From contig NW_025766981.1 in NCBI RefSeq assembly GCF_003918875.1, forward strand, positions 620,001-684,000: a DNA stretch of 64,000 nt, read 5' to 3'. Of the stretch, positions 12,401 to 50,963 are shown piece after piece; the first letter of the stretch is position 1, and each line of letters opens with the position of its first letter. A program made the position numbers and the translations under genes. Source of the stretch: Haliotis rubra (Eukaryota). The notes beneath the pieces were generated by a model. That model was not told the origin of the DNA. It saw nothing but the letters and a program-made list of their open reading frames with translations, and made no database searches.

Positions 12401-13733
12401 AACAATACTTTCCAATAAGGTATCATCAGTAATGCGTAAATTCTGTAACACTTCAAAAACATCCAGAACAAACTCAAAACAAACACTTTATTCGGTCGCT
12501 TTGACACTTCAGATTTCAATATTGAAAATAACTCTTCCGGATTGCTGACACTCTGATAATGTTCGGGGTTTTGTTTTGGTTTTGTATGTGTTGTTATATA
12601 CCATTCAAAAACAGAAGGGGGTATTGGATTACAAGATTGATAAAATTCAAATGATGAAGCCAAGGAGGAAACAGATGATGAAGAGAAATTAAGGGAAAAT
12701 GTGACAATTTATTCCATTCCATTGGAAATGTTTCATCTGTATGGATATATATTACGTTTTCTCACATGCATTGGCATTGACCAGTGGTATGCTCGCAAAA
12801 TGGAATATCCCCTACTTTTTTTTAATGGTATATTATGTGGTCATATGTTCTTATGTTTTTATTTCCCAGAGTGTAGGTTATCTAATGGTGTCAAAGTGGA
12901 TGTTGAATGAACAAACGTGTGTTTCAGGATCTCTGTTTACAAGTCTCACCCTGGCTGACCACGTGGCTGGGTTGATCCTCAGCCCTTCGTTTGCTTTCAT
13001 CTACGAGGCCACCATGAACTTTATGCGAGGTTTTATCTACCTTGTCTTCGCCAGCACTCATCTAGTTGCATTTGTGCTATTGATGTGAGTATGTCTCCAG
13101 CCGAAATACCTTTTGCGTAATACTGTCCCTTAGCTGCGCCAGGATCCGATGATAACGTATTCGAGCCCCACTATGATCTGATTTTGATCCTTCAGTAGCT
13201 CTATACCCGTGTTCTATTTCACTAAATTGATAAAATGCTGACTTGCGCCGTACTTGGTTTGCCGGCAATAGGATAGATAGATACCACATGGCGATATTAC
13301 TAAAATATTGTTCCAACTGAGTGAGTGAGTAAGATTTTACACCACCTTTAGCAATATTCCAGCAAATATCACGGCGGGGGACATAGAAATGGGTTTCACA
13401 TTCAAGTAGTACACATGCACGGAATCGAATCCAGGTCTTCAGCGTAACGAGCGAACGCTTCAACCACTAGATTACCCCCAACGTCCTTGTTCCCAGAGAC
13501 ACAAAACATAAATGTGTATATTGAGATATAAGACTCCACTATAATCGATGTGGTATCACAGACATCTGAATACGACATTAATAAGCTATTTTATCTTTTC
13601 CTTCAGATTGTTTGCATGTTTGACATATAAGCACAACAGGCGTATTGAACACGAGGACACTGTGACAATACAGGACAAGGAATGGCCTCAACAGTCTTCC
13701 CAAAGCAACCTGGCACAGAGCACTGAAATGTGA
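9457..13733 (+). CDS. SLC46: SLC46-family (PCFT/SLC46A3-like) MFS transporter, copy 1 (most divergent), 495 aa
   Basis: Exons 9457-10576, 10762-10845, 12928-13084 and 13607-13733, all GT-AG, 1488 nt in frame. Motifs GSYSDYFGRK, ASYAYAADNT..SRT, PFCW, VIRAIMSRM and QGSLF. AATAAA at 13821. Confidence 0.9.
11427..12395 (-). mobile_element. 5'-truncated L2-clade LINE in intron 2 of copy 1
   Basis: ORF 11631-12383 contains LGPIL, YADDNQLY, LKLNDDKSE, KNLGV, SRLDYC and QNRAARII..EHITPVL. The 3' end GGCGCTAAACAAATG is followed by an (ATT)n tail. Confidence 0.9.
13318..13480 (-). mobile_element. SINE family A
   Basis: Reverse complement of the family A consensus, with (GTGA)n at 13318. Confidence 0.8.
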
Positions 13734-26945: not shown

Positions 26946-27159
26946 TTGTTGGCGACCTAGAACAAGTCTTTGTCAAATCGCCATAGTTGTTGTAACATGC
27001 ATTAAAATTTAAATAAATTATTTTGAATATTAACACATTCACTTGTTCTATCCAATTACTTCATTATGGCGAAAATAGCATCATTTATATACATAATTTA
27101 TCTATATGGTATTGCTTAAATATACGATGGTGAGTGTTTGAAAAACGTTGTCATTCATG

Positions 27160-29825: not shown

Positions 29826-30055
29826 TTGGTTGGTTGGTTTGTTGTTTAACGCCGGACTCGGCAATATTCCAGCTGTATGGCGGTGGTCTGTAAATAATCG
29901 AGTCTGGACCAGACAATCCAGTGATCAACATCATGAGCATTGATCTACACAATTGGGATACTATGACATGTGTCAACCAAATCAGCAAGCCTGACCATCC
30001 GATTCCATTAGTCGCCTCTTAGTCGCATCGGTTGCTGAAGACCCATTCTAACCCT
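29826..30055 (-). mobile_element. SINE family B in intron 1 of copy 3
   Basis: Consensus match at the same position as in copy 2. Confidence 0.8.
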
Positions 30056-31280
30056 TTTACCATGTATGTGATCATGACAGTCTTTTAAGTGATATTCTAC
30101 ACTTCAACTAGTTGGCATATTTTTTGACAAAAGCAAAGACATTCATATCACAACGTATATAAACATGTGTTTGCCTGTATAAGATGTATTTTTTAATTCT
30201 TGCGCAAATTATTTGGTGTGACATATGAGACAATATTATCAGTGTCTGCTATTACTGTCGGGAGTCTTTGTTGTAGTTGTGGTGCCCAATGATGTTGCTT
30301 CTCCGTTCCTGCCGACGGTGCGAGCAATCATGTCGATGGATGGCTCCTCCTGAAATGCAGGGTGAGTACACTGACAGACGCTCAAGGACGGGGTCATCCA
30401 CGTCTTTTCTGGCGTTAGTCATGAATTAAAGTGTAACATTCAAGGACACTCATTTCAGCGTGATCAAATCAGAACAGGACTTGAGAACAGTTAACTTAAT
30501 TGAAAAACAGGAAATGATCCCGAAAACCATCTCAGGAAGCAAGGGTGTTGGTATTACATTATTAACTAGCTTTGAAGACAGGAGGCTCTCACTGAATCTG
30601 ACAATGAGATTGATTTAACCACATTTATCGTGCATAGGTTCCTTAACTTGTTTTAATAGCCTCTGAGCAGTGATATGTTATATGTTAATGCATGTAACAT
30701 GCACAACGGAAGCCTGGAAAGAACTATTTCTTCCAAGGTTACTGCATTAATGACAATATACATGCATATCTGACAACAACCATAGGATTCTGGTAGGCAC
30801 CTCGGTCCCCAGAAGCCCATGCTTACCGTATGAGACGAGCATGTGGATTGGGTGGTCAGGCTTGGCAACTTGGTGATTGCTTGTCATCATATCGTATTGG
30901 TGTGGATCGATGGTCAATCAGATGATTGTGTGGTTAAGACTCGACTAATTGTAAATCGCCGTTTTCCAACAGGAATATTGCTGGGTGATTCGTTAAACAA
31001 AAAAATCTCAAATACTAACTGAATACTTCTTCTAAAATTCCAATTCGTCAGTGTATGTTTCGTAATAATAGAATGACGTCATTCGATGTTTGAAGAGTGT
31101 GCCTATACGATGCAAGAAAACGGGACGGGTTGTCAAGCTCGGTTAGACTGTTGAAAGTGCAATACCTTGTTTAGGTGGTACGTTCTATATCATTTCAATC
31201 CACTGGTCCAGGTTGAACTATTTACACGCTACTGTCATATATTTGGAGGCTTGCTGAATAAAAACTGTATGGTGTATGAT

Positions 31281-31502
31281 ACCCGTGAAGATCCGGGTTA
31301 GAAGTGGTCTTCCGCAAGCCATGTTTGTCATTAAGCGACTAACAGGATCTGGTGGTCAGGCTCGCGGACTTGGTTGACACATGTCATCGTATCCCAATTG
31401 CGTCAATCGATGTTCCTCCTATTGATCCCTGGATTGTCTGGTTCAGACTCGATTATCCAGGCCGCCGCCACATAGCTGGAATGTTTCTGCTTGCGGCGTT
31501 AG
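31281..31502 (+). mobile_element. SINE family B
   Basis: ACCCGTGAAGATCCGGGTTAGAA..GCGGCGTT. Confidence 0.75.
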
Positions 31503-31777
31503 TAACTGAAGAGCAATTTACTTCACCCTTGAGTGAGTGAGTGAGTGTGTGAGTGAGGTAATATCTTAGCCATATCGTGATGGTAAAATATGAAAACCTG
31601 TCAGCGATGGACAGTAAAATAGCTAGAGTATCACAGATATGAATTTAAAACTAGTAATTAACTCTAAAACAGTTTAACTATGAGTAAATATGAGCTAACA
31701 TTAATATTTTTTAACTTTTCTAATGGGAAATTGAATGGTATTACGTATATGACATTTTGAATACGTTTCCAATGTTA

Positions 31778-31890
31778 AGAATAAGTAGGTAATATTATGA
31801 ATAAGTAGGTAATATTATGAATAAGTAGGTAATAGTATGAATAAGTAGGTAATAGTATGAATAAGTAGGTATTATTATGAATAAGTATTA
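31778..31890. repeat. 20-bp tandem repeat (about 5.5 copies)
   Basis: GAATAAGTAGGTAATATTAT units. There is a single unit at the paralogous site in copy 2 (about 20348). Confidence 0.9.
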
Positions 31891-32130
31891 ACATTATCAA
31901 TACATATGGAATACTGTGAATACGTATGTAATATCTGAACGTTATTTGCCAGGTTCTCTGTTTGCCGGTATTGGACTTGTGAACATCATCTCTGGGAACC
32001 TAGGGATGACAGCTTTCAACGAGATCTATAATGCCACTGTGGAGATGCTTCGTGGCTTCGCCTTTTTCGCCTGTGCGGGATTCCAGTTCTTGTCAGGAGT
32101 GGTAATAGTGTGAGTACACACCATAATCTA

Positions 32131-32260
32131 AGGTAGCCAAGTGGATAAAGCGTCCGCTTGTCAAGCCGAAGTCCCGGGTTCCATTCCTCACATGGGTACA
32201 ATGTGTGAAGCCCATTTCTGTTGTCTCCCGCCGTGATATTGTTGGAACTCACTCGCTCGC
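32131..32260 (+). mobile_element. SINE family A (partial)
   Basis: GGTAGCCAAGTGGATAAAGCG..CACATGGGTACAATGTGTGAAGCCC. Confidence 0.75.
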
Positions 32261-32359
32261 TTCTTTATGCCATTGTTTTTACACTTGACATCTAATACGT
32301 AATGTTGCTTTCACTTTTATTTGGTATCAGCTGCTATTAAATTATCGACATGGTAGCTA

Positions 32360-32779
32360 CAGTCGAACCCCAATGTCTCGAACTATTTTGAGTCGAATTC
32401 TCGTTGTGTCGAACTCATCTCGGTTCCTGTCGATTTCCTTATTTATCATTATTTTGACCCTGTCTCGTACTAGATGTGTCAAATTCCCAGTTATGTCGAA
32501 CTCATTTCAGTTTTTTAAATTACATATATTCTTATCGTTTTGTATGCATATTTATTTGTCAGGAAGAATAAAGTGATTGAATTAATTTATATTTTTTATA
32601 TATTTCAAGTTAATGATCAGTACTGCAGTAAACGTTTATTACAAAGATGTATTGTTCGTATGTATAGCCTACTATAGAAAAACGATGCTGTAAGCACTTT
32701 GCTGACGGATGTGTCGAACACTCGGATAAGTCGAACTTTCCCCTTGGTCCCGTCGAGTTCGACACAGCGGGTTTGACTG
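32360..32779. mobile_element. pogo/Tigger-like MITE
   Basis: TA-CAGTCGAACCCC..GTCTCGAACT / AGTTCGACACAGCGGGTTTGACTG-TA, with repeated TGTCGAACT subterminal motifs. Confidence 0.8.
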
Positions 32780-33140
32780 TATATTTTCTCCATGAAATGT
32801 CAATAGTTGCGGGTCTATTTTATGTAACGTCTGACCTATTGACCGATTTGTTGGACACAGCTGTGTCATTATTGAGGTACTGTCAGAACATACAATTAAG
32901 TAACTCTTCATTTACATGTATCGGAGATTTGTTAAATCGATTTAACTGAGATGATGCTATGAAACAATTTGAATTGTGAACATACAGAAAAGGCCAAATG
33001 AATACAGACAACCATCATGCTGCCAGACATTTATATGTTCTATATTTGTATTAACTATATCCAACGTGTGTTTAAACTATACCCAACTAACTTCACAACA
33101 CAATATCACGATCTCATTGACGATTTCCTTCTATCATATA

Positions 33141-33437
33141 CCATGCAGGTAGCAAAAGTACTGTAAGTCCCCATGGTCCTTAAGTTGGTGATCTACCTTC
33201 AGTTGTTGGCGATCTATAGCCAGTTTTAATATTTTATTGTCCAAATGGTGCTATTAGTTTTAATTTTCCACACTAGTTTTAGTTGTAATTGTGATATTCT
33301 AGTTGTTTTACTGTCCTTCGTCGGCAGGTTTTATAATATACATCTTTTCCATTTCAATGTGACATATGTCCTCGTCACGATACGGCTGTAATATTGCCGA
33401 TGTGACGTTAAATAATAACTCACTCACTCACTCACTA
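33141..33437 (+). mobile_element. 5'-truncated LINE 3' end (I/Nimb-like tail) with TSD
   Basis: Ends GTCACGATACGGCTGTAATATTGCCGATGTGACGTTAAATAATAA(CTCA)n with TSD CTATCATATA. The empty site is in copy 2 (about 21360). Further copies are at 54968 and 63122. Confidence 0.7.
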
Positions 33438-34243
33438 CTATCATATATGAGATAAAAGTGGCTTACGCGAAGATGAAGGTAACTTCTACGTATACATCAT
33501 AATCTACGTAGAGGACAAAACAACTTAGACTGTTTCTCTTTCAGCCGTTTGCAATTTAAACGCATTACTACGTACAGGAGAAACGACTGATTAAGAATCC
33601 ATCACATTTGCTATGATATATTACTAATCCTGCAAGGATAACCGCTATATGAATATTATAACCAATGGATATCCACGTGTTACAGGGTGTTCCTGTGTGT
33701 ATCTCACCGCGTGGTCGACACTGATGCCTCCACTGTTGTTGTCATCAACGAAGAAGACAGGACACCTGATCCCATCATCTCCCACGACAAACAAATCTCC
33801 GAAACGACGACGTAACGTCCCTGGTGAACGTTTATGACTGCTGACGACCTAAACCATGTTATTGTCATAACTGTCGTAACATACATGTAATAAATTATTA
33901 TTGATATGAACGCATTCACTTGTTCTTTGCAATTGCTTGATTATGGCAAAATTAGGATAATTTATATGCAGAATTAATCTATATGGTATTGCTTAAATAT
34001 ACGATGGTGAATGTTTGAAAAACGTTGTTATTCATGAATGAGTAAGTCCAGTTTTACGCCGCACTCAGCAATACCCGAGCTATATGGCGGTGGTCTGTAA
34101 ATAATCGAGTCTGGACCAGACAATCCAGTGATCAACAGCATGAGCATCGATCTACGCAACTGGGATATACCCCTGTTATACAGCAATGGTTTAATATGCA
34201 ATACCCCTGCTATATGGCAGCGGTATGTAAATGGCATGTAGAG

Positions 34244-35647: not shown

Positions 35648-38600
35648 ATGGAGTCTACGCCTCTAGTAGCAGGCAATGATCAAGAAGAGAAGTCTAAACT
35701 GGGAAACCTCCTCAAAGCCAACGTTGTGTTTCTGGTTTTTCATTTGGCTGTCAATATCCACGAGCCATTGGTAACACAATATCTGTACACCAGGTTCTCG
35801 GATGAGCTGTTCGGTAACAGGACAGTCCACGCTACAAACCAAACATCAGCGTGTTATCTCAACGAGTCGGATCCAGGATACATATTACAAGAAAAGGTTC
35901 AAGAAAGAACATCAAACTTTCAGACGGTACTGACGGCTATATCAAGCTCTATTCTGCTCATAAGCTGTATGTTTCTCGGGTCATATTCTGATTTTCTGGG
36001 TCGAAGGTTTCTTTTCATTGTACCTTTAATCGGAGAGTTTTTGAGATATAGCACGTTGACTGTTGTTATATGCTGGGATCTGGATTTGAGGTACATGTAC
36101 ATTGGTGAGGTGCTTGAAGGTATCAGTGGAGGGTACCATGGTGTGATTCTGGCCAGTTATGCCTACACGGCTGACAACACACCACCTAAGAATTCCAGGA
36201 CAGTTGGAATCGCTGTGATAGATTTCACCTCCAACCTATCTTCTGCAATCTCACAGCTCATGACTGGATACTTCATCAAAGACACAGGATTCCTTTATCC
36301 CTCTTTGACTACTTCATCACTCATGCTTCTCTCTGTCATCATTGTCGTTGCTCTTCTCCCAGAAACTATCAACACAGATAGAAGATCCCAATACCCATCT
36401 CCGGTGAAGGCGGTGAAGAATGTCTTTGGATTCTACTTTTCAAAAGATTTTGGACCAAAGAGAAGTCTTTTCTGGCTTTCAACTGCAGCATATTTTTTAA
36501 TATATTTTAATAAGGGTGGTATTTACATTGTAGAATATCTTTTCCAACTGAACCAGCCATTTTGTTGGGGCCCAGAACTCATCGGCTATTTCAATATGGC
36601 GTTGGCCCTCTCCAGACAATTTCTAGGAATTCCAGTCATCAAACTCTTCCATCTGTGCACTTCCGACCCTGTGATATGTATCATAACATCCCTTATACAA
36701 GCAGGAGCCTATGTCCTAGAGGGCCTGGCCGACACTAACTTCATGCTTTTTGCAGGTAAGTCATAATAAGCTTTATGTCAATAAAAGAAACCTTTGATAA
36801 GAACCTATGTTGGGAATCAGACACGGGCCTTCCACGTGACAAACGAAAACTTAAATTGATGGACTACCTTACCGACCCCACCCCTATCCCACATTTGTGC
36901 GTACTCAAATTATTATCATTCCTGTCAAAACAGTTTGAAAGATTGAAGGCTAAATATACTGATAGCTTTTCTTTGTTTTCATTGCAGCTGCTTTGCCAAA
37001 TGGTATTGCTTCCCCTCTGCTCCCGGCAGTGAGAGCTATCATGTCAAGGATGGCGCCTGCGGAAATGCAGGGTGAGTCTTATACGGATAAAGAAAGAAAC
37101 GTGCATGTGTGCAATGGAAAGACGACGCACGTTTATATAATACCTGTTTATGTTTACAGCATCCTTTCTAAAGTACATTTATCATAGCACTGAATAATTC
37201 CAAAAACTTTCAATGTATATTGCACTTCAACAACGCATGAGAGAGCTTTGGGGTAAATGTTCGTGGATAGAATGGGACGCCAACAATATGCATGCTTTCA
37301 CAAAATTCATCATATATCATAATTTTAAGTATAACAAGTACATAACCATATGCCCACATGCTATATATGTCGAAGTTTAACGAATCGCGAGAAATTTTTA
37401 AAAATCGGAGAATCAATTTGATTCATCAGTGCAGGTTCGTGAATATTCAAATAAACATTCCTGTACCAACTGAGACATAATGTATATTCAATGTGATTCA
37501 GCTGGAATGCATGTACCTTAAATAAATAAACAAATAAATAAATAGATAAATAAATAGTTCCGTGAGTTAACGCATTGCATTTTAAACTCAGTTACACCAT
37601 GCTACGATTGCGACAATATCATAGGTTTATGAATCAGATAGTGAGGATGTCTGGTGATGTCAAAACAGGAAACGGCACGGGGCATAATTTGGGTCACCGA
37701 GTGTCAAAATTAGATATCGTTTCTATCATTGCTACCATACAACCTTTGGGAAATGTTACTAAGGTCTTGGACGTTGCTAAGGTCTTGGATAACCATGTTC
37801 AAGAAACATTTCAGTAAGAACAAAAGGTAGCTGTTTGAAAGGTTCGTAGAAAGAGGCCCTAAGAAGAACTGGAACGTAGTTCCAGTGGCTGGAACTGCTG
37901 GAGGATGACGTATCATCTTGGAAAGATCGTCAAAGCGACTTTGTCAAGAATATGTGTACATAGATCTTAATATGAATCTTATCCAGTTCAGAAGGTAAAT
38001 GCGTGGTGGCGAATTGGTCGTTTGACCATTAGACATCAGATTATCGATATACCCAAAACTCAATTTCAAAATTGTTTTGTTTACCAATCGGAACAGGTCC
38101 CTATTCTTATTGCTAAATGCATGCCGTCACTTTTTGCTTGCAGGATCACTGTTTGCAGGGGTTGGGCTAATGAACATCCTCTCAGCAGGTTTAGGAGTGA
38201 CAGCTTTCAACCAGATGTATGATGCAACTGTGAAGATATTCCGGGGTTTCGCCTTCCTCGTCTGTGCTGCTTGTCATTTGTTGGCGATAGTTATCATAGT
38301 GTGAGTATATGAATGATCATGGGTATTAAAACGTTTCTTGAAAATGTACAGGGTTTTTCATTAGCCGTTTTGGTATAAAACCACTATGTACCAGTAACCT
38401 TATTACATAGTGTTGACGTCATATGTTCAAAAGGTCATCTGTTCTACGTAAGTTCCTGGTTTATCTTTTCACTGACGAATAAATTAGTCTGTCTCACAGT
38501 CCCTGAACCATATTATTTTCCCTACAACCTAGCCTTCCCTGCAATGCTAAAGCCCTTAATGAAGCAAGATTTCCCCTGGTTGGTCTCCGTGGGGCTCCTT

Positions 38601-38847
38601 TTTAATTTAAATGGGTGTATTTGTCACTTGTATGTTCAGAGACTAAGCGTTAGTCTAACTAATAAATACGATCACACGTATAGGACGTTTTTAGGACAAA
38701 CTAACGTATGTTTATATGTATGTGTTTCGTACTTTGCATAAATAAATATATAATTTTCTGTCTTGCAGGGTGTTTCTGTGTTTGTCACGCCGCACTATCG
38801 ACATTAATACCTCCACCAATGTTGTCAACAATGACTCCGATCAGTGA
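35648..38847 (+). CDS. SLC46: SLC46-family transporter, copy 4, 475 aa
   Basis: Exons 35648-36755, 36988-37071, 38144-38300 and 38769-38847; 1428 nt in frame with GT-AG introns. Confidence 0.9.
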
Positions 38848-40130
38848 CACGATGATGTGATGTCATTGGATGATGCTTATGGATAGAGAAGACATACACC
38901 CAGAGCATAACGTGAACCTATTTTGATACAGTGATTCTATGGTAGTCCAGACACTTCCGGGATGATTACCGTCGAGAGTCTCCTTATTATTGGAATACTG
39001 TATTAAGTGAAATTTGAAGTTTGACTGGTGCCACAGGTGCAGCGGGTTACGCTCCCCTTTCCACGAAAACCCGGTATCATCTATATATTGATAGTGCTTC
39101 ATAAACACAAGTCGGAACTGAAATATCAATTCCGCGCTTTCAGAAGAAGTTCCTCATGGATGTGGAAATGGTTTTGCCGCTCAGGTTAATCAACAGAGAT
39201 AGTGCCCCAATCGTGACAGTTTGGAGTATCTTTTAATTCATGTCAGCATTCTTCTCTTTTAGCCGTTACTCCGTCTAAATTAGCTAATGCTCAAGTCAGT
39301 TGACTCAGTGATATGTATTACGTTTACAAACAAATACCCGATTAGAATGTTCTCTTGATTAATTTGGGTTGTTTTGTCTGTTTGATTTATTTTTATATTA
39401 TTATTTTTCATTTTATTCAATTTTTTAAAAATAATTTAATTTTTTTTTTTTGTTGGGGGGAGAGGGGGATTGGGTGTGCATAACACATGACTCCGTAACT
39501 ATGATAATGAGTGTTCAACATATATAGTGGATTAATGAAATATATATGCAAAATGTCTGGTCCAAAATATATTCGACTATATACAAATTAATATTGCTAA
39601 GCGAGGCATTATACAAGAAACTTACCAACCAAATAAATATAATTTAAGCATTTTCCAAAGCGGTCCTGTATTGCGACATCATATATCCTTTGATCAGGTT
39701 TTGGTAAAATCACCTTTTTCTATCATAGCCCATACTTTCCTTTTCCCTGCTGTTTTTCTGCCACAAACTAGGAACATGGATTGTAGATTTAAAACCCATT
39801 CCGAGTAAAAGCACTGAAGAATACCTTTGGATTCTTTTTTCACTCGTAACAACTGACGGGCCAATGCGAAACCCTATCTAATTCAACTGCTGCACTCTTT
39901 GTATAATAATATAGTGGTGACGATGTAGATTGATGCCGGTTCCTACCACTTATTACAGTTGGAAACTACTTTGTGGTACTTCCAATCAAGGATAGTTACA
40001 CGCATGCAGAGTTTGTCCAAGTTAGTGTATGCCGTCCATAGTGGATGGATGTTAAATTGAAATGATGATAACACTACTCACCATAGTTGATGAATTACGT
40101 GTGTATCTTGTGTTACGGTTTAGAAATTTA

Positions 40131-40329
40131 CATAACAACGTATGGTTTGGATTTACGACTTCCTTAATATTTACGACACGACGTTTCTGGGCTACTTCCT
40201 GCCCCATTCACCTGATAACGGGGCAAGAAGTAGCCCAGAAACGTCGTGTTGTAAATAGTAAAGAAGTTGTAAATCCATACCATACGTTGTTATGTTACCT
40301 TCCAACTTCTAAATGCCCATCAATCATCT
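40131..40329. mobile_element. Penelope-like terminal remnant: inverted repeat with hammerhead-like core, flanked by direct repeats
   Basis: About 75-bp inverted arms at 40131-40205 / 40220-40294. The direct repeat GGTTTAGAAATT is at 40117 and 40330. It shares TAAAGAAGTTG..ATCCATA..CTTCTAAA with the 27337 element. Confidence 0.55.
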
Positions 40330-41583
40330 GGTTTAGAAATTACGAAGACAAAAGTCTTGTAAGTCCCCTTTAAACCAGCAAAACAGAACACAGACAAGTC
40401 TATGATATTCAATAATATATTGAATAAAAAACAAACAAGGTTATAATGAATGACAGTACAGATTTCCAATACAACACAATTGAGTCACAAATCTAGAAAT
40501 ATTAACTCAACAACATCTTGATATTTCTGGTAAACAGATGTACTGATTGAAGATTGTTGACAGCAGTTGAAAGATCAATGTAGATCAATAACTCTTGAGG
40601 TATTTCGAGGGGAAGTTACGTGCTAACCAAAGACCCCTAGTCTAACTCCATTCAAATTATTATACGCTATACGTTTGATATTAAAAGGGTCAATAATTGC
40701 ACGGTAGTCCGTGTCGTTTCTTTAAAGCGTGAAAAAGGGTGTTATGTCTTGTATGAGGTGACGTGAAATGTAATTTGATTGACAATGCTGCAATGTCACC
40801 GTTAAAGAAAATGTACACATCCAATCTAAAGTTCTCGTAGTGGCTACACAAACTCGTTAGCCCATTTAACAACTGACACTTATGATTTTCTGATTTCAAC
40901 TTTGCACATTCCTGAAATTTCCTTGTCGGAAAACTAGATCCGTCCCCACATTAGTACAATGTGTGAAGCCCATTTCTGGTGTCCCCTGCTAGATATTGCT
41001 GACATATTGCTGAAAGTGACGTAAAGCCCATTCACGCACTCATTCACTCTCCCATACTAGATGCAATAATGTGTCGACCTGGTGTCAGATAAAAAATATT
41101 CAGATATGTAATTGATAAATTTAACATGAAATCAATAGCCTTATCTTCAAAGTCACCAAACCATCAACTTCAAGATCATTAAAGCAAAAAGAAAACTATT
41201 GTATAATAATCTCGATGATATCATCCCTAGTTGTAGTACCCCAGCTGTATGGCGGTGATGTGTAACGAAGAGTTTGGTCCGAGACAAGGAATTGTTGACA
41301 TAATGAACAACGACGTAAGACGACAACATGCAGTAAACTATCTTTCTCAAGATTGAACAATCTCATCAGAAGCAACAAACTGCCTGTGGTATGTTTGAAG
41401 CCGGATTACATGGAGGGGGTAACATATTTAGTAGTAAATTCCAAAAATGACCGAAATACTCACACAGATTGGGTGATTGAATTATTGTGGGTAGTGTGTA
41501 TCGGTAAAATAGAATGTAAAAGCATAACTTCTCTTCCTAAGGCTCCTTGACCATATTCCAAAGGTATGAGTATTGTTGTCAAG

Positions 41584-41734
41584 CGGGCGGTCGGGTAGCG
41601 TAGTAGTTAAAGTGTTCACTCGTCACGCCAAAGACCCGGGTTCGATTCCCCATATGGGTACAATGTCTGCAGTTCATTTATAACTGGAATATTGCTAAAA
41701 GCGGCATTAAAACTAAACTCACTCGCTCACTCAC
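41584..41734 (+). mobile_element. SINE family A
   Basis: tRNA-like head with B box GGGTTCGATTCCCC and a (CTCA)n tail. A partial copy is also at 40937-41050. Confidence 0.8.
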
Positions 41735-42069
41735 TATTGTTGTCTACAAACAATCCTATGCCACTGTGCAGAACGAATAATAAGATAAGATAGATATATC
41801 CAATTATGTAAACAGTAAGTCGATTAATGCTAAATTGTAATTGTAAAGGTATGTCGGACCTGTGTTGCATATATACAAACAGTAATGGAGTGATCTCGAG
41901 TCTGTGTTCACCCACACAGTCTGATTGTGTTATCGCAATGCATGCTCGCGTGTGTCACCAGGTATACAAGGGTTTTTTTTATGCCACGGGGGTTCAAACT
42001 TCAAGGCTGCAGGTATATATACTATCGAGAAGCCAGCTGTGCACACGGGTCATAGTATACCGAACAAAC

Positions 42070-45000
42070 ATGGAGTCTACGCCTCTACTAGCAGGCAATG
42101 GTCAAGAAGAGAAGTCTAAACTGGGAAATCTCTTCAAAGCCAACGTTGTGTTTCTGATTGTTCATTTGTCTGTCAATATCCACGAGCCATTGGCAACACA
42201 ATATATGTACACCAGATTCTCGGATGAGCTGTTCGGTAACAGCACAGTCCACTCTACAAACCAAACATCTACGTGTTATCTCAACGAGTCGGATCCAGGA
42301 TACATATTACAAGAAAAGGTTCAAGAAAGGACATCAAACTTTCAGACGGTACTGACAGCTATGTCAAGCCCTATTCTGCTCATTAGCTGTATGTTCCTCG
42401 GGTCATATTCTGATTTTCTGGGTCGAAGGTTTCTTTTTATTGTACCTTTAATCGGAGTGATTCTGAGGTACAGCACGTTGACCATTGTCATTTGCTGGGA
42501 TCTGGATTTGAGGTACATGTACATTGGTGAAGTTATTGAAGGAATAAGTGGAGGGTACCGTGGTGTGATTCTAGCCAGTTATGCCTACACGGCTGACAAT
42601 ACACCACCTAAGAATTCCAGGACAGTTGGAATCGCTGTGATAGATTTCACCTCCAACCTGTCTTCTGCAATCTCACAGCTCCTGACTGGATACTTCATCA
42701 AAGACACAGGATTCCTTTATCCCTCTTTAACTGCTTCATCACTCATGCTTCTGTCCCTAATCCTTGTCATTGCTCTTCTCCCAGAAACTATCAACACAGA
42801 TAGAAGATCCCAATACCCATCTCCGGTGAAGGCGGTGAAAAATGTCTTTGGATTCTACTTTTCGAAAGATTTTGGACCAAAGAGAAGTCTTTTCTGGCTT
42901 TCAACTGCAGCGTACTTTGTAATATATTTTACTACTAGTGGAGTGTACTTTGTAAAATATCTTTTCCAACTGAACCAGCCATTTTGTTGGGGTCCAGAAC
43001 TCATCGGCTATTTCAATATGGCGGCGTCCCTTTCCAGACAATTACTAGGAATTCCAGTCATCAAACTCTTCCATCTGTGCACGTCCGACCCTGTGATATG
43101 TATCATAACATCCCTTATACGGGCAGGAGCTTATGTCCTAGAGGGCCTGGCCGACACTAACTTCATGCTTTTTGCAGGTAAGTCATAATAAGTGTTATAA
43201 CAATAAAATTATGCTTTGATAAGAACCTATGTTGGGAGTGGTACAAGGGCCTCCCACCTGACAAACGAAAGTTTTAATTAGTGGACTACCTTACCGCCCC
43301 CGCCCCCAGTCTACATTGGTGAGTACTCAATTTATTACCACTCCTGACAAAACAGTTTGAAAGATTTCCATTACACATTAAAAAAGGCAAAATATACTTT
43401 CATTTGTTTTCATTACAGCTGTTTTGCCAAATGGTATTGCTTCCCCTCTGCTCCCGGCAGTGAGAGCTATCATGTCAAGGATGGCGCCTGCAGATATGCA
43501 GGGTAAGTCTCATATACACTCTTAAAAAAGAAACGCATAGACGTTTTAAGTAGTTCAGTTCGATACATATTGAGACAGCAATCGTCATTAAGACAATTCT
43601 TTTGTTTGAATTCTTTGTTGTTGAATTCCTTTGTTGTTGTTAACCATGTCGTGGTTGTTGTGCATTGCCCACAAACGCATCCCAAAATGTGTTTGTAAAC
43701 GTTTGTCATAAGTAATGAAATCGATACATGAAACCTGCTCAATGGGAAGAGACGTCGACTATAAAAGGCCAAATTCATCATTCCATTACGAAATTATCTG
43801 TAACATTAATTTTGATCATTTTAGAGCTATTGAAACAAGAATACCTTCTTAAAACAATTGCCCACTAGAAAGAGTAGAAAAACACCTATAAAGTTTAATT
43901 TTTCCCTTAGACGCAATGCATTTTTCAAAGTAAATGTCTTCCTGTACCTGTAACTAATCAATAAACCTTAAATAGTTTTATAGTTCCTGATAGAAAGCAG
44001 TTACTAGAATGTATTTTGTGAAAAAAAGCAAAATCTAATTTTCCCAAATTTTTCCCACCCTGACCCCCTTTGTGGGGTCACTGCGGGAAAAATCCCCCGC
44101 ACCCAGCCTGCAAACACCTGGAATTTGAATGTACATATGATAAGCTTTCAAAAAAATATAGTCTTCAAAATTCCCCCGGGAGGAGGGTCACCTATATCAG
44201 CCCATGGGCTATCAGAAATCGTCTGAGAGAAGTGGGAATTCGAGCATATCGACCAAAAGTTGAACCTGTCCTGACACGTGTCCAATGGTGCAACGGGCTA
44301 CAGGCATGGAACCTGGGGAACTGGTGACGCGCTGTTTGGTTCAGCGATGAATCGCGTTTCTTCATCAACGACAGAATGGGAGACAACATGTCTATCGACG
44401 TCGATACGAACGTTTTGCGCCGAACTGCGTTCGACAGGTGGACAGACTTGGTGGAGTAGGCGTCATGGTGTGGGGAGCCATGTCTTACACGGGTAGATTA
44501 GAGCTAGTGGTGGTTCAAGGCCATCTTACAGCACATCGCTACATCGACCAAATCCTGCGACCTCACCTCCTCCCACATTTTTAACTAACCGCCAGAGGGA
44601 GCTGTTTTGGCACGACAAAGCTCGACCCCACACAGCTCGTTAAAAGGTGCCTATCTCGCCAATGCAAACGTCAATGTCCTTACCTGTCCTTCCAAATCGC
44701 CTGATCTGAACCAGATCGAGCATCGTCTACGGGACGAATTTGATCGACGCGTCAGTAAACGTCACCATCGTCCTCAGACACTTGCAGAACTTGCCAACGC
44801 GTTGCAGGAGGAACGGCAAAGGATTCCCCAAGCAAACATCCGACAGCTTGTGCAATCCCTTCCAAGGCGGTGTCGAGCAGTGACGGCTGGAAGGGGTGGT
44901 GTCAAAAGGTACTGACCTGCACGCTCCCGTGTGTCCACACATGTGCAGTGAGCGAACTGAATTAATGCTGACAATGACAACAATGCATATGTTCACCTCT

Positions 45001-48000
45001 GTGTCGAATTTCATTCATCTATGTTCAAGCTTAATCGACTTATGTATACTTAAATACGTTTAATACATTTCCTTATTTTTAGCCTAATCGTTTCTTTTCT
45101 TTAGATAAAGAAGTGAGTGAGTATGGTTTTACGCCTCTTTTGGCAATATTCCCGCAATATCACGGCAGGGCGACACCAGAAATGGGCTTCACACTTTGTA
45201 CCCATGTGGGGAATCGAACCCGGGTCCTCGGCGTGACGAGCGAACGCTTTTAAAACCGGCACCGTTCACTGACCATGTAGATAAAGAAAGATGTGCATTT
45301 TTAAAAATCTATTAATTACCTTTTGTATTCAAACAATCGTCCAAATATGTAACAAAAGTGTTGATAACATGATTTTACACAATTGCACAAGTAAAAAATC
45401 GACTTTACCTGAAAATGTTGATTTTGATGAGCTTTCTTACAAGGATTAAAAAGGCATAGCCACAACGCAACAGAAATCACCTTTCAGTTGAAACTGTGCA
45501 GCAAAGAGCATGCACTGTTTGACACTGAACATCGCAATTGAAAGAATGCACGCTGAGATTATCAGTCTTCTGTTGCCAAACGTCTGAATGTTATTCTGAG
45601 CACGATATCACGGCTTGCAGCTCATTAATACCAAATAGGCATAACAAATGACCGTCCCCGTACAGGCAGACCTCGAGTCACCACTGTAGCCCAAGATCGG
45701 AACATCCGGGTACTACATTTGCGTGATCATACTGCCAACTGTACAGAACAGGTTGAGAGAGATTGGACTGAGAGCCAGGAGCCCCGACGTCGGGACCGTG
45801 CTACGTCGTAACCATCGCGCATAACGTCTCCGTTATCTAAAATTATCCACTTGGTTGTATAAACGTTTCCTTCTTTTAAACTGGTGTCTAGATTCATGTA
45901 CTAAAGTCTATTTGTGGACGAGTTATACATGTTTGAAAATACATTTTCGCAACAGATATCTGGGTTATGCGTTTCATTTTGTGAATAGTATATTTTAGTA
46001 CCTTTGTAATGTTTACATTTCACTGATAGTATGTCACATATTGTATACGAAAGACTAATGCTGCTACGTTTGTCGCATACATATTTTGTTCAGCGAAATC
46101 TGTAGTTGTTTTGATTAGTTTCTCATTGCTTCGATTATTTCAAGTTTCTTTCAACAACCAGAAAATCCGAGTATTTTCTCGCTGCTTCATATATTTTCTC
46201 GGTGTTTGAATTATTTCTTCAAATTTTGAGTATTTTCTCGTTAGTTCATTTATATTCTCCAGATTTTGAGTATTTTCCTATGCTACTTGAAATGACAAGA
46301 AAATATTCAAAACTGGAAGAAACCAGAAACAGATAAACGTAATGATAAACAAATTCGTCTGGAATTCAAATACATCTCAGAGAGTATATTTTAATAGTCC
46401 AAAACAATCAGTGTTTAGTTTTAGGTCATGACGTACTTAGCGGACTCATTATGTCAGCAATTTATATTCAATTTGATTAATTAAGGAGGCATGCAAACTT
46501 TCAGTGTTATATGCCGGCTTGATATGTGTTGGTTGAAGCAGCTTATTTAAGAAATCAATGCAAATTATGTAAGATCAAACATTGCACTCTTAACTCACAG
46601 TTACCATAACCCGTGAAGATCCTAACCCGTTAGAATTAATCTTAAGTAACTCATGCTTGTCGTAAGAGGCGACTAACGGGATCGGGTGACCAGGCGCGCT
46701 GGCTTGGTTGACCATGTCATCGTATCCCAATTGCGAAGTCGATGCTCATGATGCTGATCACTGTATTGTCTGGTCCAGACTCGATTATTCACAGACCGCC
46801 ACCATAAAGCTGGAATATTGCCGAGTGCAGCGTTAAACAACAAACCTACCAACCAACGTTGCACCAATCTGCGATTGCAAAAATATCACAAGTGAAAATA
46901 GAGAATTGCATAATAATAAGTCATCTTCTATAGCGCACAGACTCCAAACACCAAGTGATTGCTCGCGGCGCTTAATCAGATTCTTATTACCCCGGATAAC
47001 CCAAGCTGCCTGTTAGGCGCTAGAAGGTTATAGTCACATGACTTTATCCCACCGGGTACCCATTTTCAGCTAGGTGAACAGAGGCAATTTCAACAAACTC
47101 ACTTGCCTAAGACCACATGCATCACATGTGCTTCGTTGTGGGGCAGGACTGAAGCCCTAGAAACTCTCAGGAGTCAGGCTGCCAAACACGGACACCCATC
47201 CAAGGATTGTCCGAGCTCGACGTTGCTTAACTTCAACTGATTTGTGACCTGAGCTCTGTGCACAGGACCACGCGCCACCACCATAGGACATCATTTTGGT
47301 CACTGAGTGTCTGAATTCGAGATGTTTTCTCCCATTGCTACCATGCAACCTTCTGAAAGCATTATTAAGGCCTTGGATGGTGTGGTCCTGGTCAAGAAAC
47401 CTTTGAGAAAGTGCAACAGGTAGCTGTTCATAGTGCGTGACAAGATCCCCTAAGAAGGTCTGGGTGCCTATTCTCGAAAGTGTCCCATCTAAGACAGATC
47501 CTAACTAGTTGGGACAGGAGTTAGGACATCCTACCGTTAGGATAAGACCCATTCTTGAAACGACGCTATCCCCGTCCTAACTTGAGCTACCGATCCTAGC
47601 TAGGATAACGAGCTCTTCAGTAGAAGAGATAGGAAAACATTCATTACGTTGGGGGATTCCCCTAAATATCACCCATGATTCATTCCATAAATAACACATA
47701 TACAAATGTATAAAGGCAAATACAATCTCGTTTGCAAGATAAATGGTAAGACTAGAAATCGAAGTAGAAGCTTGAATGTGGTGAAAGTCAGCTTTTGGTG
47801 GACTTAATAGATCTAGAAGAAATTATAATTAATTATGGTTATAATTAAAATACACCTCTTGTATCCAGAAAAATAGAGGTGAATTAGTACCTGAATGGAT
47901 TTTAAATATTTAATGAAATTGTTTAATATCTATTTGTTCAAATTACCATACTTCCAGAAAACAAAGTATTGTTATAATTATGCTGCTATATTCGATATTT

Positions 48001-50963
48001 TCATCACATTATAGTAGATTTGAAGTTTTTAAAATTCATTTATTTCACAAGGATATAACATTTTTACTTCAGAGTTTGAAAGTCTGCCAAAAAAGCAATA
48101 AGATATGTGCGAAAATATTTTCATTTTATTTCCTTTTTTTGAGAAAATCATGACTTGAACTCTCATTATGCGTCATCTCACAAACTGAAAATTCACCTAG
48201 GAAATAAACAGGAATTACTCCCCCTATCAAGCTGGCCTTGACATTGACATTTCACGTCAATGTGACAGAAAAGAGTAATGTTTTGATTAAAAAGGCAGAG
48301 AATAGGTAAGAATTGAACAAATCTCTTTTGTAGATCTAAAAAGTATGTGCATTGCAACAAGTGTGACTATTCATTACCGATAAATTGATAATATAAACAC
48401 AAAATACTATTCTTAACTAAAACTGTTTGCTGTTGTAATTTCAAATGTAATTTAGGCTAGTTATTTTTTTTGACAACGTCAAGATTGGTGAACAAACAAG
48501 AACCACACCATGTTGATTTCCACTAACATAGACTTAGGACAAGTCAGAACCTATCCTAGTAATTGTCCTAAGTTAAGATATCCTAGCGCTAGGATACTTT
48601 TCGAGAATAAGGTAGGACACCTATCCTAGACCCTAGGATCAAAGTTAAGATATCCTAGGGCTAGGATCCTTTCGAGAATAGGGGCCCAGAAACGTAGTTA
48701 CAAAGATGTAGCTGCTGAAGTATGGCATCACTCAAGCAAGAGAGTCGGGGAAAGGTTGATTATTGCAAATGTCTTCACACAGATTTAGTCACGAAGATGT
48801 ATACATAGATCTTACATTGAATCATGTCTAGTTGCACATAATTGGCTGTTTGACCATTAAAGTACTGTCGGAAATAGAAACAAAAACTGTTTTTAGGCTG
48901 TTACCCTGTATCCCTAAAATTTACACAACTACCAAAATCAAATGTTGAAATAACCCACATTGGTTCAGTGGGGTGTGTCATAGAATATCCAGAAGTGCAT
49001 GTTTACTCGTAAAATAGGGCAAAACTAAAAAAATACGAATAGCTGCTGAAAACAATAGATGGCAATTAGGTCGCTCAGCCAGGTTTGACGACGGACCGTC
49101 GACTCACCTGGCATGAAATGCACGTGCTACCTACAGGCACAAGGGGTCATCTCAAAGATATTTTATGCTTTTGTCATGTTTATTGAATATGTCTCATCTA
49201 TTTGATTATCATCTTACGTGTCTTTCATAACGTGTATGTTGAGATATGTAAAAGAATATGATACCCATAGGAAAGCTTAAATCAACTATCGTATTAAATG
49301 TCTCAAAATATATAGGTGACAAGACCACCCCAAGATCGACAGGACTGGATATTATTTGTTAATTGTTAAGACATGCCGTTTACTTCCTCCAGTTTAATTC
49401 CCCTAAAGGATTATTTTATCGTAGCTGATATCTCTATGCCCCATGCCAGTACGACCCCAACCACCGTCTGCGACACCCGTCCTGGTTTTGCTTTTGAGAC
49501 AAGCCCTCCTACCTGTTTCTTTTTAAAGTGATAGTGGGGCTCCATGGTAGCTTCATCCTAAATAGTTTCTGTATTAAAGTCGATATGTTTTACGTCAGCT
49601 ATCGTTTATAATGAAGCTAAGTCTAGTTTCAAAATAGGCATTTAAATAGTGTCCTTTGAAATACAATAGCATCGCACACTAATTTGCATAAAGCCATGGT
49701 CTGTTCTAAATAAGTTGCTTTGGACTTAGAAAAAACCGCATTGCTCATTTGAGCACTTATCTCTCCTCAGTAAAGTCCTTTTAACGTTTCCTATCTCCCC
49801 GCCACTGAGACTGTAGTTAGACCGAACTTAGTTTCACAGATATTTCACACTTTCACATTTTAACTTCATAAATGGTAGATATATATGTGATATATATATT
49901 TTTTCTATTTCCGACAGTACTTTAGTGAGCACTATCAGATCATCCATATACCAGAAACCCAATATCAGAATTGGGTGAATGCACAATGTCATGTGATAAG
50001 TTATGAAATGTAACATTTGTTACATTCTTATTCTTACTACAGATTCTAGTACTTTTTGGGGTTGAGTCACATCCGCAGAGTCATGCACCTTGGTGTGCAT
50101 GTTTCCAGCACACCAAGTCAGCCATCTAACCCACTCAGCCAACATGGTTTCCAAGTCGGACAACTGGTAGTCTAGGTCACGTGCCTGACTCTGAAAGTGT
50201 GGGTTCGAATCCCGGATCCGTCTCAACCCAAAGCGAAGTAGAATCTACACTTTACTGAGAAAGTGTAATCCCAAATATAGCAAATGCCCCTTGTTTTGTG
50301 TTTGCCAGTCAGGTTCCAGACAAGGTTCCAATTCTGATTCCTATGTAAATGCCTACGGTCAGCTGTTGGTTTCAGGATCACTGTTTGCCGGAGTTGGGCT
50401 GATCAACATCCTCTCAGAAGGTTTAGGCCTACCAGCTTTCAACCAGATGTATGATGCAACTGTAAAGATATTCCGTGGTTTCGCCTTCCTCGTCTGTGCT
50501 GCTTGTCATTTGTTGGCGATAGTTATCATAGTGTGAGTATATGAATGATCATGGGTACATTAAATTTTCAGGAAAATGTAAAGGATATTTTATTTGCCTT
50601 TTTTTATAAAACCTCTTGTGTCTTCAATGCCAGCACCCGCATTACATAGTGATGACGTCTCACGTTCAAACTTTCCAGTCATGTCCAACATCTGATGTCA
50701 TCTGTGTGACATATCTGTTCTACGTAGTTTCAGTATTGTACAAGGTTTAGTCTTCACTGAATACGACGTTTTACAGCCGAAACATGTTTGTATGTTAGTG
50801 TCGACATACATGTGTTTCGTACTATAAGGACTTTTACTCATCCAGTAAAGTAAACACAACTCTTATATATTTTTTGTCTTGCAGGGTGTTTCTGTGTTTG
50901 TCGCGCCGCACCACCGACATTAATACCTCCATCAATGTTGCCATCAATGACTCCGATCGGTAG
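42070..50963 (+). CDS. SLC46: SLC46-family transporter, copy 5, 475 aa (recent duplicate of copy 4)
   Basis: Exons 42070-43177, 43419-43502, 50376-50532 and 50885-50963; 1428 nt in frame. Intron 2 is expanded to 6.9 kb by TEs. Confidence 0.88.
43515..45101 (+). mobile_element. Degenerate Tc1 transposon in intron 2 of copy 5
   Basis: Left TIR TACACTCTTAAAAAAGAAACG. Transposase remnants at 44192-44915 (IRNRLRE, FSDESRF, GVMVWG, SPDLNQIEH, GGVKRY*). Absent from the copy 4 intron. Confidence 0.8.
45113..45255 (-). mobile_element. SINE family A
   Basis: Consensus match with flanking direct repeat TAGATAAAGAA. Confidence 0.8.
45345..45991 (+). mobile_element. Tc1 deletion derivative
   Basis: N-terminal transposase remnant (DRPRTGRPRVTT..QDR.IR) and right TIR TGCGTTTC.TTTTGTGAATAGTA-TA. 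Same family as 53680 and 63860. Confidence 0.7.
46609..46856 (+). mobile_element. SINE family B
   Basis: ACCCGTGAAGATCC..CATGCTTGTCGTAAGAGGCGACTAACGGGATCGGG..GGAATATTGC..GTTAAACAACAAACC. Confidence 0.85.
46911..47282 (-). mobile_element. SINE with chimeric 5S rRNA/tRNA-like head, Deu/Nin-like core and L2-like tail
   Basis: Minus strand reads GAAGTTAAGCAACGTCGAGCTCGG..CTTGGATGGGTG (5S internal control region), then CACCTAGCTGAAAATGGGTACC, GCGCCTAACAGGCAGCT, and GCGCTATAGAAG..(TTA)n. Absent from the copy 4 intron. Confidence 0.7.
47463..48686. mobile_element. PIF/Harbinger-like MITE, longer copy of the 2038-2802 element in reverse orientation
   Basis: TIRs GGTGCCTATTCTCGAAAG / CTTTCGAGAATAGGGGCC with CTG/CAG flanks. 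The empty site AAGAAGAACTGGAACGTAGTT is at about 37861 in copy 4. Confidence 0.85.
48861..49921. mobile_element. Kolobok-like non-autonomous DNA transposon
   Basis: TIR AGTACTGTCGGAAATAGAAA / TTTCTATTTCCGACAGTACT with TTAA and TTAG flanks. Absent from the copy 4 intron. Confidence 0.75.

What the first reader, a model, noticed from the sequence alone, without database searches (positions are those of the whole stretch)
35648..43177. Hypervariable substrate-cavity residues, centred on TM7
Seen: copies 4 and 5 are near-identical in loops, yet 7 of 13 consecutive TM7 codons change amino acid (LIYFNKGGIYIVE versus VIYFTTSGVYFVK). Other differences also alter charge: IGEF/IGVI, GGYH/GGYR, IQAG/IRAG, LSAG/LSEG. 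The TM7 segment reads SQMSVNG, SMFCGAG, SSSCWAG, IYFNKGG, IYFTTSG and TYFSMNG in copies 1-6. By my recalled alignment to human PCFT (VITVHFGAQD), the His281-equivalent position is V/G/W/K/T/M. The motif-A Asp/Arg, the Arg376 equivalent (RAIMSR), an acidic residue at the Glu185 equivalent (IAVID) and the two loop cysteines stay fixed. Inference: diversifying selection on ligand specificity with a conserved proton-coupling scaffold.
Basis: partly seen in the sequence, partly recalled or inferred. Interest (0 to 1): 0.75.

Follow-up and report, generated by a model that had tools for sequence, protein, structure and literature searches.

The report
Abalone SLC46 transporter array, variable TM7
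Six tandem SLC46 (folate-transporter-like) membrane transporter genes in the blacklip abalone differ most in a pore-lining helix, an ordinary pattern for a duplicated transporter family, and the claimed diversifying selection is at best borderline and limited to two positions.

Summary
The window is a Haliotis rubra scaffold carrying six tandem four-exon SLC46-family MFS transporter genes, which NCBI names "SLC46A3-like". In detail: copies 4 and 5 differ at 45 of 475 residues, and 7 of those fall in 13 consecutive TM7 codons (scan P about 0.01-0.03). By HMMER alignment to chicken PCFT, five of the seven sit at positions homologous to TM7 residues of human PCFT that cysteine scanning implicated in substrate binding. 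K/T289 aligns to His281.

The selection inference is not established:
- The TM7 patch has omega 0.44, significantly below 1, and its synonymous rate is also raised (about 1.7x).
- A branch-site test on copy 5 gives LRT 0.
- M8 beats M7 and M8a (p 0.01 and 0.004), but M2a versus M1a does not (p 0.11).
- The signal weakens with segment trees and is lost without copy 5.
- Only sites 289 and 412 are flagged.

Copy 5 is a young, H. rubra-lineage duplicate of copy 4 under purifying selection (omega 0.41). Copy 3 is a dead pseudogene and copy 2 carries a frameshift. The "conserved PCFT scaffold" is only partly true, because the TM4 Arg/Asp pair, Phe282, Tyr315 and the TM11 Glu are replaced.

Best reading: ordinary specificity divergence after tandem duplication.

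The parts
9457..13733 (+). Copy 1: divergent SLC46 paralogue (about 40% identical to copy 4), intact. Exons 9457-10576, 10762-10845, 12928-13084, about 13604-13733.
   Evidence: orthologue P0019 in H. cracherodii
18143..26950 (+). Copy 2: exons 18143-19247, 19681-19764, 20423-20580, exon 4 from 26801. An extra T near 20533 in a T-run frameshifts TM12. This is either a real lesion or a homopolymer assembly error.
   Evidence: NCBI model P0005 reads through with an aberrant C-terminus; branch omega 0.21
28715..33815 (+). Copy 3: pseudogene, 95% nt identical to copy 2. It has 1-nt insertions at 28769 and 30337 and two in-frame stops in exon 1, one of them inside TM7.
35648..38847 (+). Copy 4 (XP_046575188.1, 475 aa): exons 35648-36755, 36988-37071, 38144-38300, 38769-38847.
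36497..36535 (+). Copy 4 TM7 patch, codons 284-296 (LIYFNKGGIYIVE). Codon 289 (Lys, His281 equivalent) is at 36512-36514.
42070..50963 (+). Copy 5 (XP_046575189.1; the NCBI model adds 44 aa from an upstream ATG): exons 42070-43177, 43419-43502, 50376-50532, 50885-50963. Intron 2 is 6.9 kb and holds a degenerate Tc1/mariner remnant.
42919..42957 (+). Copy 5 TM7 patch, codons 284-296 (VIYFTTSGVYFVK). Including two flanking synonymous changes at codons 281-282, there are 12 nt differences from copy 4 across codons 281-296.
38185..38187 (+). Copy 4 codon 412 (Ala; Glu in copy 5 at 50417-50419). It lies in TM11, one helical turn after the equivalent of chicken PCFT Glu407, and is the second candidate positively selected site.
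55818..61039 (+). Copy 6, intact, 475 aa: exons 55818-56931, 57024-57107, 60102-60258, 60967-61039.

Best explanation
This is a lineage-specific tandem array of SLC46-family major-facilitator transporters in Haliotis rubra. The family contains PCFT (SLC46A1), SLC46A2 and SLC46A3.

The shared transport machinery is conserved: the 12-TM MFS fold, motif A, the TM5 Asp / TM10 Arg gate pair and the ECL1 to TM7-8 loop cysteine pair. A short set of central-cavity positions differs between paralogues: TM7 284-296, TM4 164, TM9 351 and TM11 412. This is what is expected when duplicated transporters drift or specialise in substrate preference.

Copy 5 is a young duplicate of copy 4, made after the H. 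rubra and H. asinina lineages split. It is still constrained overall but took about two thirds of the replacements, including all or nearly all seven in TM7 (positions 289 and 292 polarise ambiguously). Most of the patch evolves under relaxed purifying selection on a locally raised substitution rate. At most one or two sites (289, the His281 equivalent, and 412) may be positively selected.

Shown here: gene structures, duplication order, omega values and homology of the sites to PCFT cavity residues. Inferred: that the changes alter substrate specificity. The substrate is unknown and is unlikely to be folate.
For: - Identity: 100% match to the H. rubra SLC46A3-like protein. Pfam MFS_1 matches. 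Chicken PCFT 7bc6 is the best sequence hit (E 1e-85) and the best fold hit (TM 0.79/0.87).
- Duplication order: dS is 0.149 for copy 4 versus copy 5, against 0.33 and 0.36 to the H. asinina orthologue. 19 sites support (c4,c5) against 9 and 9 for the alternatives. No copy 5 lies within 10 kb downstream in H. asinina or H. rufescens.
- Constraint on copy 5: the ORF is intact and branch omega is 0.41, below 1 with p = 0.003. Polarised changes are 34 N / 25 S on copy 5 against 14 N / 18 S on copy 4.
- Variability: the TM7 patch is the most variable 13-residue window in the family, yet omega is 0.44.
- Site models: M8 against M7 gives p = 0.010 and against M8a p = 0.004, flagging only sites 289 and 412. 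The own GY94 code reproduces the IQ-TREE M0 lnL.
- Cavity mapping: PCFT cysteine-scanning and cryo-EM residues (PMC8978580, PMC7612623).
- Orthologues keep paralogue-specific TM7 motifs: NKGG in both H. rubra and H. asinina copy 4.
Against: - No model coordinates were available, so cavity-facing orientation rests on homology to PCFT at about 24% identity rather than on measured geometry.
- TM3 residues 127-143, in a helix that is typically peripheral in MFS folds, is almost as variable as TM7.
- Synonymous changes are also clustered in the copy 5 patch (about 4 in codons 281-292 against about 1.2 expected). Family-wide dS in the patch is about 1.7x the gene average. The middle-third tree places copy 5 outside copy 4 plus asinina. 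Together these hint at a mutational cluster or conversion from an unsampled donor.
- No expression or transport data exist; the RNA look-up was inconclusive.
Confidence: 0.6

Rival explanations
1. Pervasive diversifying (arms-race type) selection on ligand specificity acts across the TM7 cavity stretch.
For: M8 beats M7 (p = 0.010) and M8a (p = 0.004), with omega about 3.4 at sites 289 and 412. The signal persists with segment-specific trees (p = 0.028 and 0.014). Site 289 shows 7 different residues in 15 sequences. The 7/13 cluster is non-random. The variable sites map to homologues of PCFT substrate-binding-domain residues.
Against: Patch omega is 0.44, significantly below 1. M2a against M1a gives p = 0.11. 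The copy 5 branch-site LRT is 0. N:S in the patch against the rest gives Fisher p = 0.09. Without copy 5, M8 against M7 gives p = 0.12 and M8 against M8a gives p = 0.059. Only about 0.5% of codons fall in the selected class. Orthologues conserve their TM7 motif. One of the 'diverse' copies is a pseudogene.
Confidence: 0.15
2. The copy 5 TM7 cluster is mutational rather than selective. It could be a short gene-conversion tract from an unsampled paralogue or allele, or a clustered multi-nucleotide mutation event, in a redundant young duplicate under relaxed constraint.
For: There are 12 nt differences across codons 281-296, including about 4 synonymous-type changes against about 1.2 expected. 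Local omega falls below 1 once these are counted. The middle-third tree moves copy 5 outside copy 4 plus asinina. At 289 and 292, copy 5 shares nucleotides with the rufescens and cracherodii orthologues. Patch dS is raised family-wide. Copy 5 omega is higher than background (0.41 against 0.26, not significant).
Against: No sampled paralogue shares more than 4 of the 12 derived nucleotides. Three replacements are unique to copy 5: L284V, N288T and E296K. Variation in pS along the gene appears unremarkable: a hand chi-square on the window counts gives about 9.8 on 9 df. Copy 5 is clearly still constrained.
Confidence: 0.2
3. The cluster is a chance clumping of neutral or nearly neutral replacements.
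For: The window was chosen after seeing the data. The rate-weighted scan P is only 0.026.
Against: The uniform scan P is 0.009. The same stretch is also the most variable window among the other 13 sequences.
Confidence: 0.05

Closest known systems
[quoted passage not shown]
   Same: It is the best sequence hit (E 1e-85) and best fold hit (TM 0.79/0.87). It shares the 12-TM MFS fold, motif A, the ECL1 and TM7-8 loop cysteines, a TM5 acidic residue with a TM10 Arg, and a TM4 helix break.
   Different: The folate and proton-coupling residues are replaced in all intact copies:
- Arg156 is Glu.
- Asp164 is Gly or Thr.
- His289 is variable.
- Phe290 is Gly, Ser, Asn or Ala.
- Tyr323 is Gln.
- Glu407 is Asn or Asp.
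- Asn98 is Thr or Ser.
Identity is about 24%. A folate substrate is therefore unlikely.
SLC46A3 / SLC46A2 (lysosomal and plasma-membrane SLC46 carriers of drug catabolites, steroid conjugates, cGAMP and muropeptides)
   Same: NCBI's pipeline names all the abalone proteins SLC46A3-like. It is the same family. Family members carry diverse organic substrates, including immune ligands (bioRxiv 10.1101/2022.09.29.509906; PMC8228594).
   Different: Orthology to SLC46A3 rather than to the whole vertebrate SLC46A1-3 group was not tested here. Nothing is known about the abalone substrates.
Lineage-specific tandem expansions of transporter families whose paralogues differ at cavity-lining positions (general pattern)
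   Same: A tandem array contains live genes, young duplicates and pseudogenes. The fastest change is in a cavity helix, orthologues conserve paralogue-specific motifs, and overall omega is well below 1.
   Different: Nothing here departs from the pattern. The most notable detail is that the fastest site is the equivalent of PCFT His281.

Membership tests
SLC46 family (MFS superfamily) | 12-TM major facilitator fold | tested here: met
   AF2 model has pLDDT 84 and pTM 0.83 with 12 TM helices. Top Foldseek hit is 7bc6_A, E 3e-20, TM 0.79/0.87. Pfam MFS_1 scores above its cutoff.
SLC46 family (MFS superfamily) | Closest sequence relatives are SLC46 proteins | tested here: met
   Profile against PDB: PCFT at E 1e-85, next hit MFSD10 at 5e-05. 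All named homologues are SLC46A3-like or PCFT-like.
SLC46 family (MFS superfamily) | Motif A (G-x-x-S-D-x-x-G-R-R) between TM2 and TM3, plus the ECL1 / TM7-8 loop cysteine pair | tested here: met
   G111, D115, G118, R119, C69 and C306 are invariant in 30 homologues and in copies 1, 2, 4, 5 and 6. Disulfide formation itself is not testable here.
PCFT (SLC46A1) functional type: proton-coupled folate transporter | TM4 intrahelical Arg148-Asp156 pair (chicken Arg156-Asp164), which binds the folate gamma-carboxylate and a proton | tested here: not met
   Glu154 and Gly162 (Thr in copy 1) occupy these positions in all intact copies. The residue roles come from PMC7612623.
PCFT (SLC46A1) functional type: proton-coupled folate transporter | His281 and Phe282 in TM7, Tyr315 in TM8, chicken Glu407 in TM11 | tested here: not met
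   His is V/G/K/T/M, Phe is N/A/G/S/N, Tyr is Gln, and Glu is Asn or Asp. The residue roles come from PMC8978580.
PCFT (SLC46A1) functional type: proton-coupled folate transporter | TM5 Glu185 - TM10 Arg376 gate salt bridge | tested here: met
   Asp192 and Arg385 are present in all copies. Conservation is at the sequence level only.
SLC46A3 orthologue | Groups with vertebrate SLC46A3 to the exclusion of SLC46A1 and SLC46A2 in a tree | not tested
   No vertebrate SLC46 sequences were fetched. The name is NCBI's automatic one.
Gene under positive diversifying selection | A site class with omega above 1 supported by likelihood-ratio tests | tested here: inconclusive
   - M2a against M1a: p = 0.11.
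- M8 against M7: p = 0.010; M8 against M8a: p = 0.004.
- With segment trees: p = 0.028 and 0.014.
- Without copy 5: p = 0.12 and 0.059.
Relative branch lengths were fixed at their M0 values.
Gene under positive diversifying selection | omega above 1 over the claimed TM7 stretch, or on the copy 5 branch | tested here: not met
   Patch omega is 0.44, below 1 with p = 0.002. Branch-site LRT is 0. Copy 5 branch omega is 0.41.

The most novel reading that the evidence does not exclude
The abalone SLC46 array is a diversifying set of importers for microbe- or diet-derived small molecules, for example muropeptides, cyclic dinucleotides or algal metabolites, by analogy with fly and mammalian SLC46 carriers. 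On this reading the His281-equivalent (289) and TM11 412 are true targets of recurrent positive selection that retune ligand range.
Probability: 0.12. Interest if true: 0.55.

Novelty: new member of a known kind. Interest (0 to 1): 0.3.

Why it matters
If the TM7 and TM11 sites really set substrate range, copies 4 and 5 would be a natural, minimally different pair: 45 substitutions, 7 of them in one helix. That pair could be used to map specificity determinants in the poorly understood SLC46 family, whose mammalian members carry folates, drug catabolites, cGAMP and muropeptides. As it stands, this is a routine lineage-specific transporter expansion already annotated by NCBI. The evidence for adaptive evolution is borderline.

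Tried and rejected
- Gene conversion from a sampled paralogue as the source of the copy 5 TM7 tract. No sequence in the window or in 7 fetched loci from 4 species shares more than 4 of the 12 derived nucleotides. Variation in pS along the gene looked unremarkable.
- Copy 5 as a pseudogene. Rejected: the 475-codon ORF is intact, omega is 0.41 and below 1, and NCBI models it as a protein.
- Copy 5 as an ancient paralogue. Rejected on dS and site patterns, although the middle-third tree disagrees.
- RNA evidence. Laying four candidate runs gave mostly short SINE-like repeat matches and only faint contigs on copy 5 exon 1, so it is uninformative.
- Direct cavity-versus-lipid mapping on the AF2 model. 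Model coordinates are not exposed to scripts, so published PCFT residue data were used instead.
- Literature on SLC46 expansion in molluscs. Nothing specific was found.
- H. asinina second gene in L004 and the first exon set in L003. These are frameshifted pseudogenes and were left out of the codon analysis. Copy 1 was left out as too divergent, copy 3 as a pseudogene, and copy 2 was truncated at its frameshift.


Full report
**What is there**

The window has no N runs. It matches a 1.21-Mb Haliotis rubra scaffold: the copy 4 protein is 100% identical to XP_046575188.1, 'solute carrier family 46 member 3-like'. tblastn with copy 4 finds six tandem + strand copies.

Reading the junctions shows four exons with conserved phases. 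The copy 4 model reproduces the NCBI protein exactly. Copy 1's fourth exon was located with its H. cracherodii orthologue.

State of each copy:
- Copies 1, 4, 5 and 6 are intact.
- Copy 2 has one extra T in a T-run in exon 3 that frameshifts TM12. NCBI's model simply reads on into an aberrant tail.
- Copy 3 is 95% identical to copy 2 in nucleotides. It carries two 1-nt insertions and two in-frame stops, one of them inside TM7, so it is a dead pseudogene.
- Copy 5 has a 6.9-kb second intron with a decayed Tc1/mariner remnant. It is annotated as XP_046575189.1 with a 44-aa upstream extension.

The array continues beyond the window with another pseudogene and two near-identical copies.

**Family**

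Pfam gives MFS_1. The only strong solved relative is chicken PCFT, at E 1.8e-27 with one exon and 1e-85 with a 30-sequence profile. An AF2 model has pLDDT 84 and pTM 0.83 with 12 TM helices. Its best fold match is 7bc6, with TM 0.79/0.87.

Mapping PCFT's functional residues onto the copies gives the following (roles from PMC7612623 and PMC8978580):

| PCFT feature | State in the abalone copies |
|---|---|
| Motif A Asp/Arg | kept |
| TM5 acid (as Asp192) | kept |
| TM10 Arg385 | kept |
| Two loop cysteines | kept |
| TM4 Arg156 | Glu154 in every copy |
| TM4 Asp164 | Gly or Thr |
| Tyr323 | Gln |
| Glu407 | Asn or Asp |
| Asn98 | Thr or Ser |
| Phe290 | variable |
| His289 | variable |

These are SLC46-family carriers, but not folate-type PCFTs.

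**The observation**

Copies 4 and 5 are both 475 codons with 45 amino-acid differences. Seven fall in codons 284-296. A permutation scan gives P = 0.009 with uniform placement and 0.026 when sites are weighted by variability in the other sequences. The four charge-changing differences and the six TM7 strings are as quoted.

In this region the numbering of copy 4 equals that of chicken PCFT, and human numbering is 8 lower. Positions 289, 290, 292, 294 and 296 therefore correspond to human 281, 282, 284, 286 and 288. All five are on the list of TM7 residues that cysteine scanning identified as a potential substrate-binding domain. H164R corresponds to human Gly158, the TM4 break. Q351R corresponds to chicken Asn350, which hydrogen-bonds His289. 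A412E lies one helical turn after the Glu407 equivalent.

The 'cavity' part of the claim is therefore supported by homology. I could not measure geometry because model coordinates are not exposed.

**History of copy 5**

I fetched the orthologous loci from H. asinina, H. rufescens and H. cracherodii and extracted exact CDSs.
- dS is 0.149 for copy 4 versus copy 5, against 0.33 and 0.36 to the asinina orthologue.
- Informative sites favour (c4,c5) by 19 to 9 and 9.
- No copy 5 lies within 10 kb downstream of the orthologue in asinina or rufescens.

Copy 5 is thus a young duplicate in the H. rubra lineage. Polarised by three outgroups, it took 34 nonsynonymous and 25 synonymous changes, against 14 and 18 for copy 4. 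The TM7 replacements fall on copy 5, except that changes at 289 and 292 polarise ambiguously. Copy 4's motif NKGG is identical in H. asinina.

**Selection tests**

PAML and HyPhy are not installed, so I wrote GY94 F3x4 site, branch and branch-site likelihoods. They were checked against IQ-TREE: M0 lnL is -8468.59 against -8468.58. The data were 15 sequences by 449 codons, with relative branch lengths fixed at M0 plus a global scale.

| Test | Result |
|---|---|
| M0 omega | 0.267 |
| M1a / M2a lnL | -8363.16 / -8360.96, p = 0.11 |
| M7 / M8 / M8a lnL | -8348.49 / -8343.91 / -8347.35 |
| M8 against M7 | p = 0.010 |
| M8 against M8a | p = 0.004 |
| Selected class under M8 | 0.5% of codons at omega 3.4; only 289 (P 0.98) and 412 (0.95) |
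| Separate trees for three gene thirds | p = 0.028 and 0.014, same two sites |
| Without copy 5 | p = 0.12 and 0.059 |

Per-segment M0 gives omega 0.33 for TM7 and 0.44 for the 13-codon patch. The patch value is significantly below 1 (p = 0.002) and comes with a 2.15-fold rate multiplier. That corresponds to dS about 1.7x and dN about 2.8x the gene average. N-terminus, TM1, ECL1 and TM9 have similar omega (0.39-0.45).

Tests specific to copy 5:
- Branch-site model A with copy 5 as foreground gives LRT 0.
- The copy 5 branch omega is 0.41. It is below 1 (p = 0.003) and not different from background (p = 0.135).
- N:S in the patch against the rest (8:2 against 39:44) gives Fisher p = 0.09.

What survives is a fragile signal at two cavity positions.

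**Alternative for the cluster**

The copy 5 patch also contains extra synonymous changes at codons 281, 282 and 291 and at the third positions of 289 and 292. In total there are 12 nt differences across codons 281-296. That is about 4 synonymous-type changes where 1.2 are expected.

The middle-third tree pulls copy 5 outside copy 4 plus asinina. This hints at a mutational cluster or a micro-conversion. However, no sampled paralogue shares more than 4 of the 12 derived nucleotides. Variation in pS along the gene looked unremarkable by a hand chi-square on the window counts. An unsampled donor cannot be excluded.

**Expression**

The single run search found no run on record as RNA that holds copy 5. 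Laying four candidate runs produced mainly matches to short repeats at 40954-40990 and 41600-41724, and only faint contigs over copy 5 exon 1. This does not decide the question.

**Verdict**

The variable sites are homologous to PCFT pore residues. The array nonetheless looks like an ordinary birth-and-death transporter family, with live genes, a young duplicate and pseudogenes. Its cavity positions evolve fastest under relaxed purifying selection, with at best borderline positive selection at 289 and 412.

The most likely mechanism is divergence of substrate preference after tandem duplication on a conserved alternating-access engine. This is inferred, not shown. No literature on SLC46 expansion in molluscs was found.

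Noticed in passing
window 14333-16183: A 34-bp satellite array of about 50 copies at 82-89% matches lies between copies 1 and 2. It explains the strong AT skew of that bin. Translated on the minus strand, it gives spurious short hits to the TM12 peptide.
   Followed up: partly
window 28715-33815: Copy 3 is a decayed duplicate of copy 2 (95% nt identity) with two 1-nt insertions (28769, 30337) and two premature stops. Copy 2 itself has a possible homopolymer frameshift near 20533.
   Followed up: yes
window 44070-44915 (intron 2 of copy 5): There are fragmented ORFs with a weak Tc3-type transposase HTH match (PF01498, E 2.7e-4). This is a degenerate Tc1/mariner insertion that inflates the intron to 6.9 kb.
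   Followed up: partly
window 40954-40990 and 41600-41724: Short segments are covered at very high depth by contigs of all four laid runs, with many different flanks and 'joints'. These are dispersed repeat (SINE-like) fragments, possibly related to the SINE families that other notes of this scan report near the window.
   Followed up: no
codon 154 of all copies (copy 4: window 36107-36109): The TM4 position that is Arg148 in human PCFT (binds the folate gamma-carboxylate) is a conserved Glu in every abalone copy. This charge inversion argues for a non-anionic or different substrate class.
   Followed up: partly
L003:576-6792 and L003:10001-23257 (H. rubra, downstream of the window); L004:17215-19692 (H. 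asinina): The array continues with a fragmented pseudogene and two nearly identical intact copies in H. rubra. H. asinina also has a frameshifted copy. Birth-and-death turnover is common to the genus.
   Followed up: partly
residues 289 and 351 across 15 sequences: The equivalents of the PCFT His289-Asn350 hydrogen-bond pair change together by clade: M/L/V with Leu in the copy 6 clade, and polar residues with Gln or Arg elsewhere. This cannot be separated from shared ancestry with this sample.
   Followed up: no
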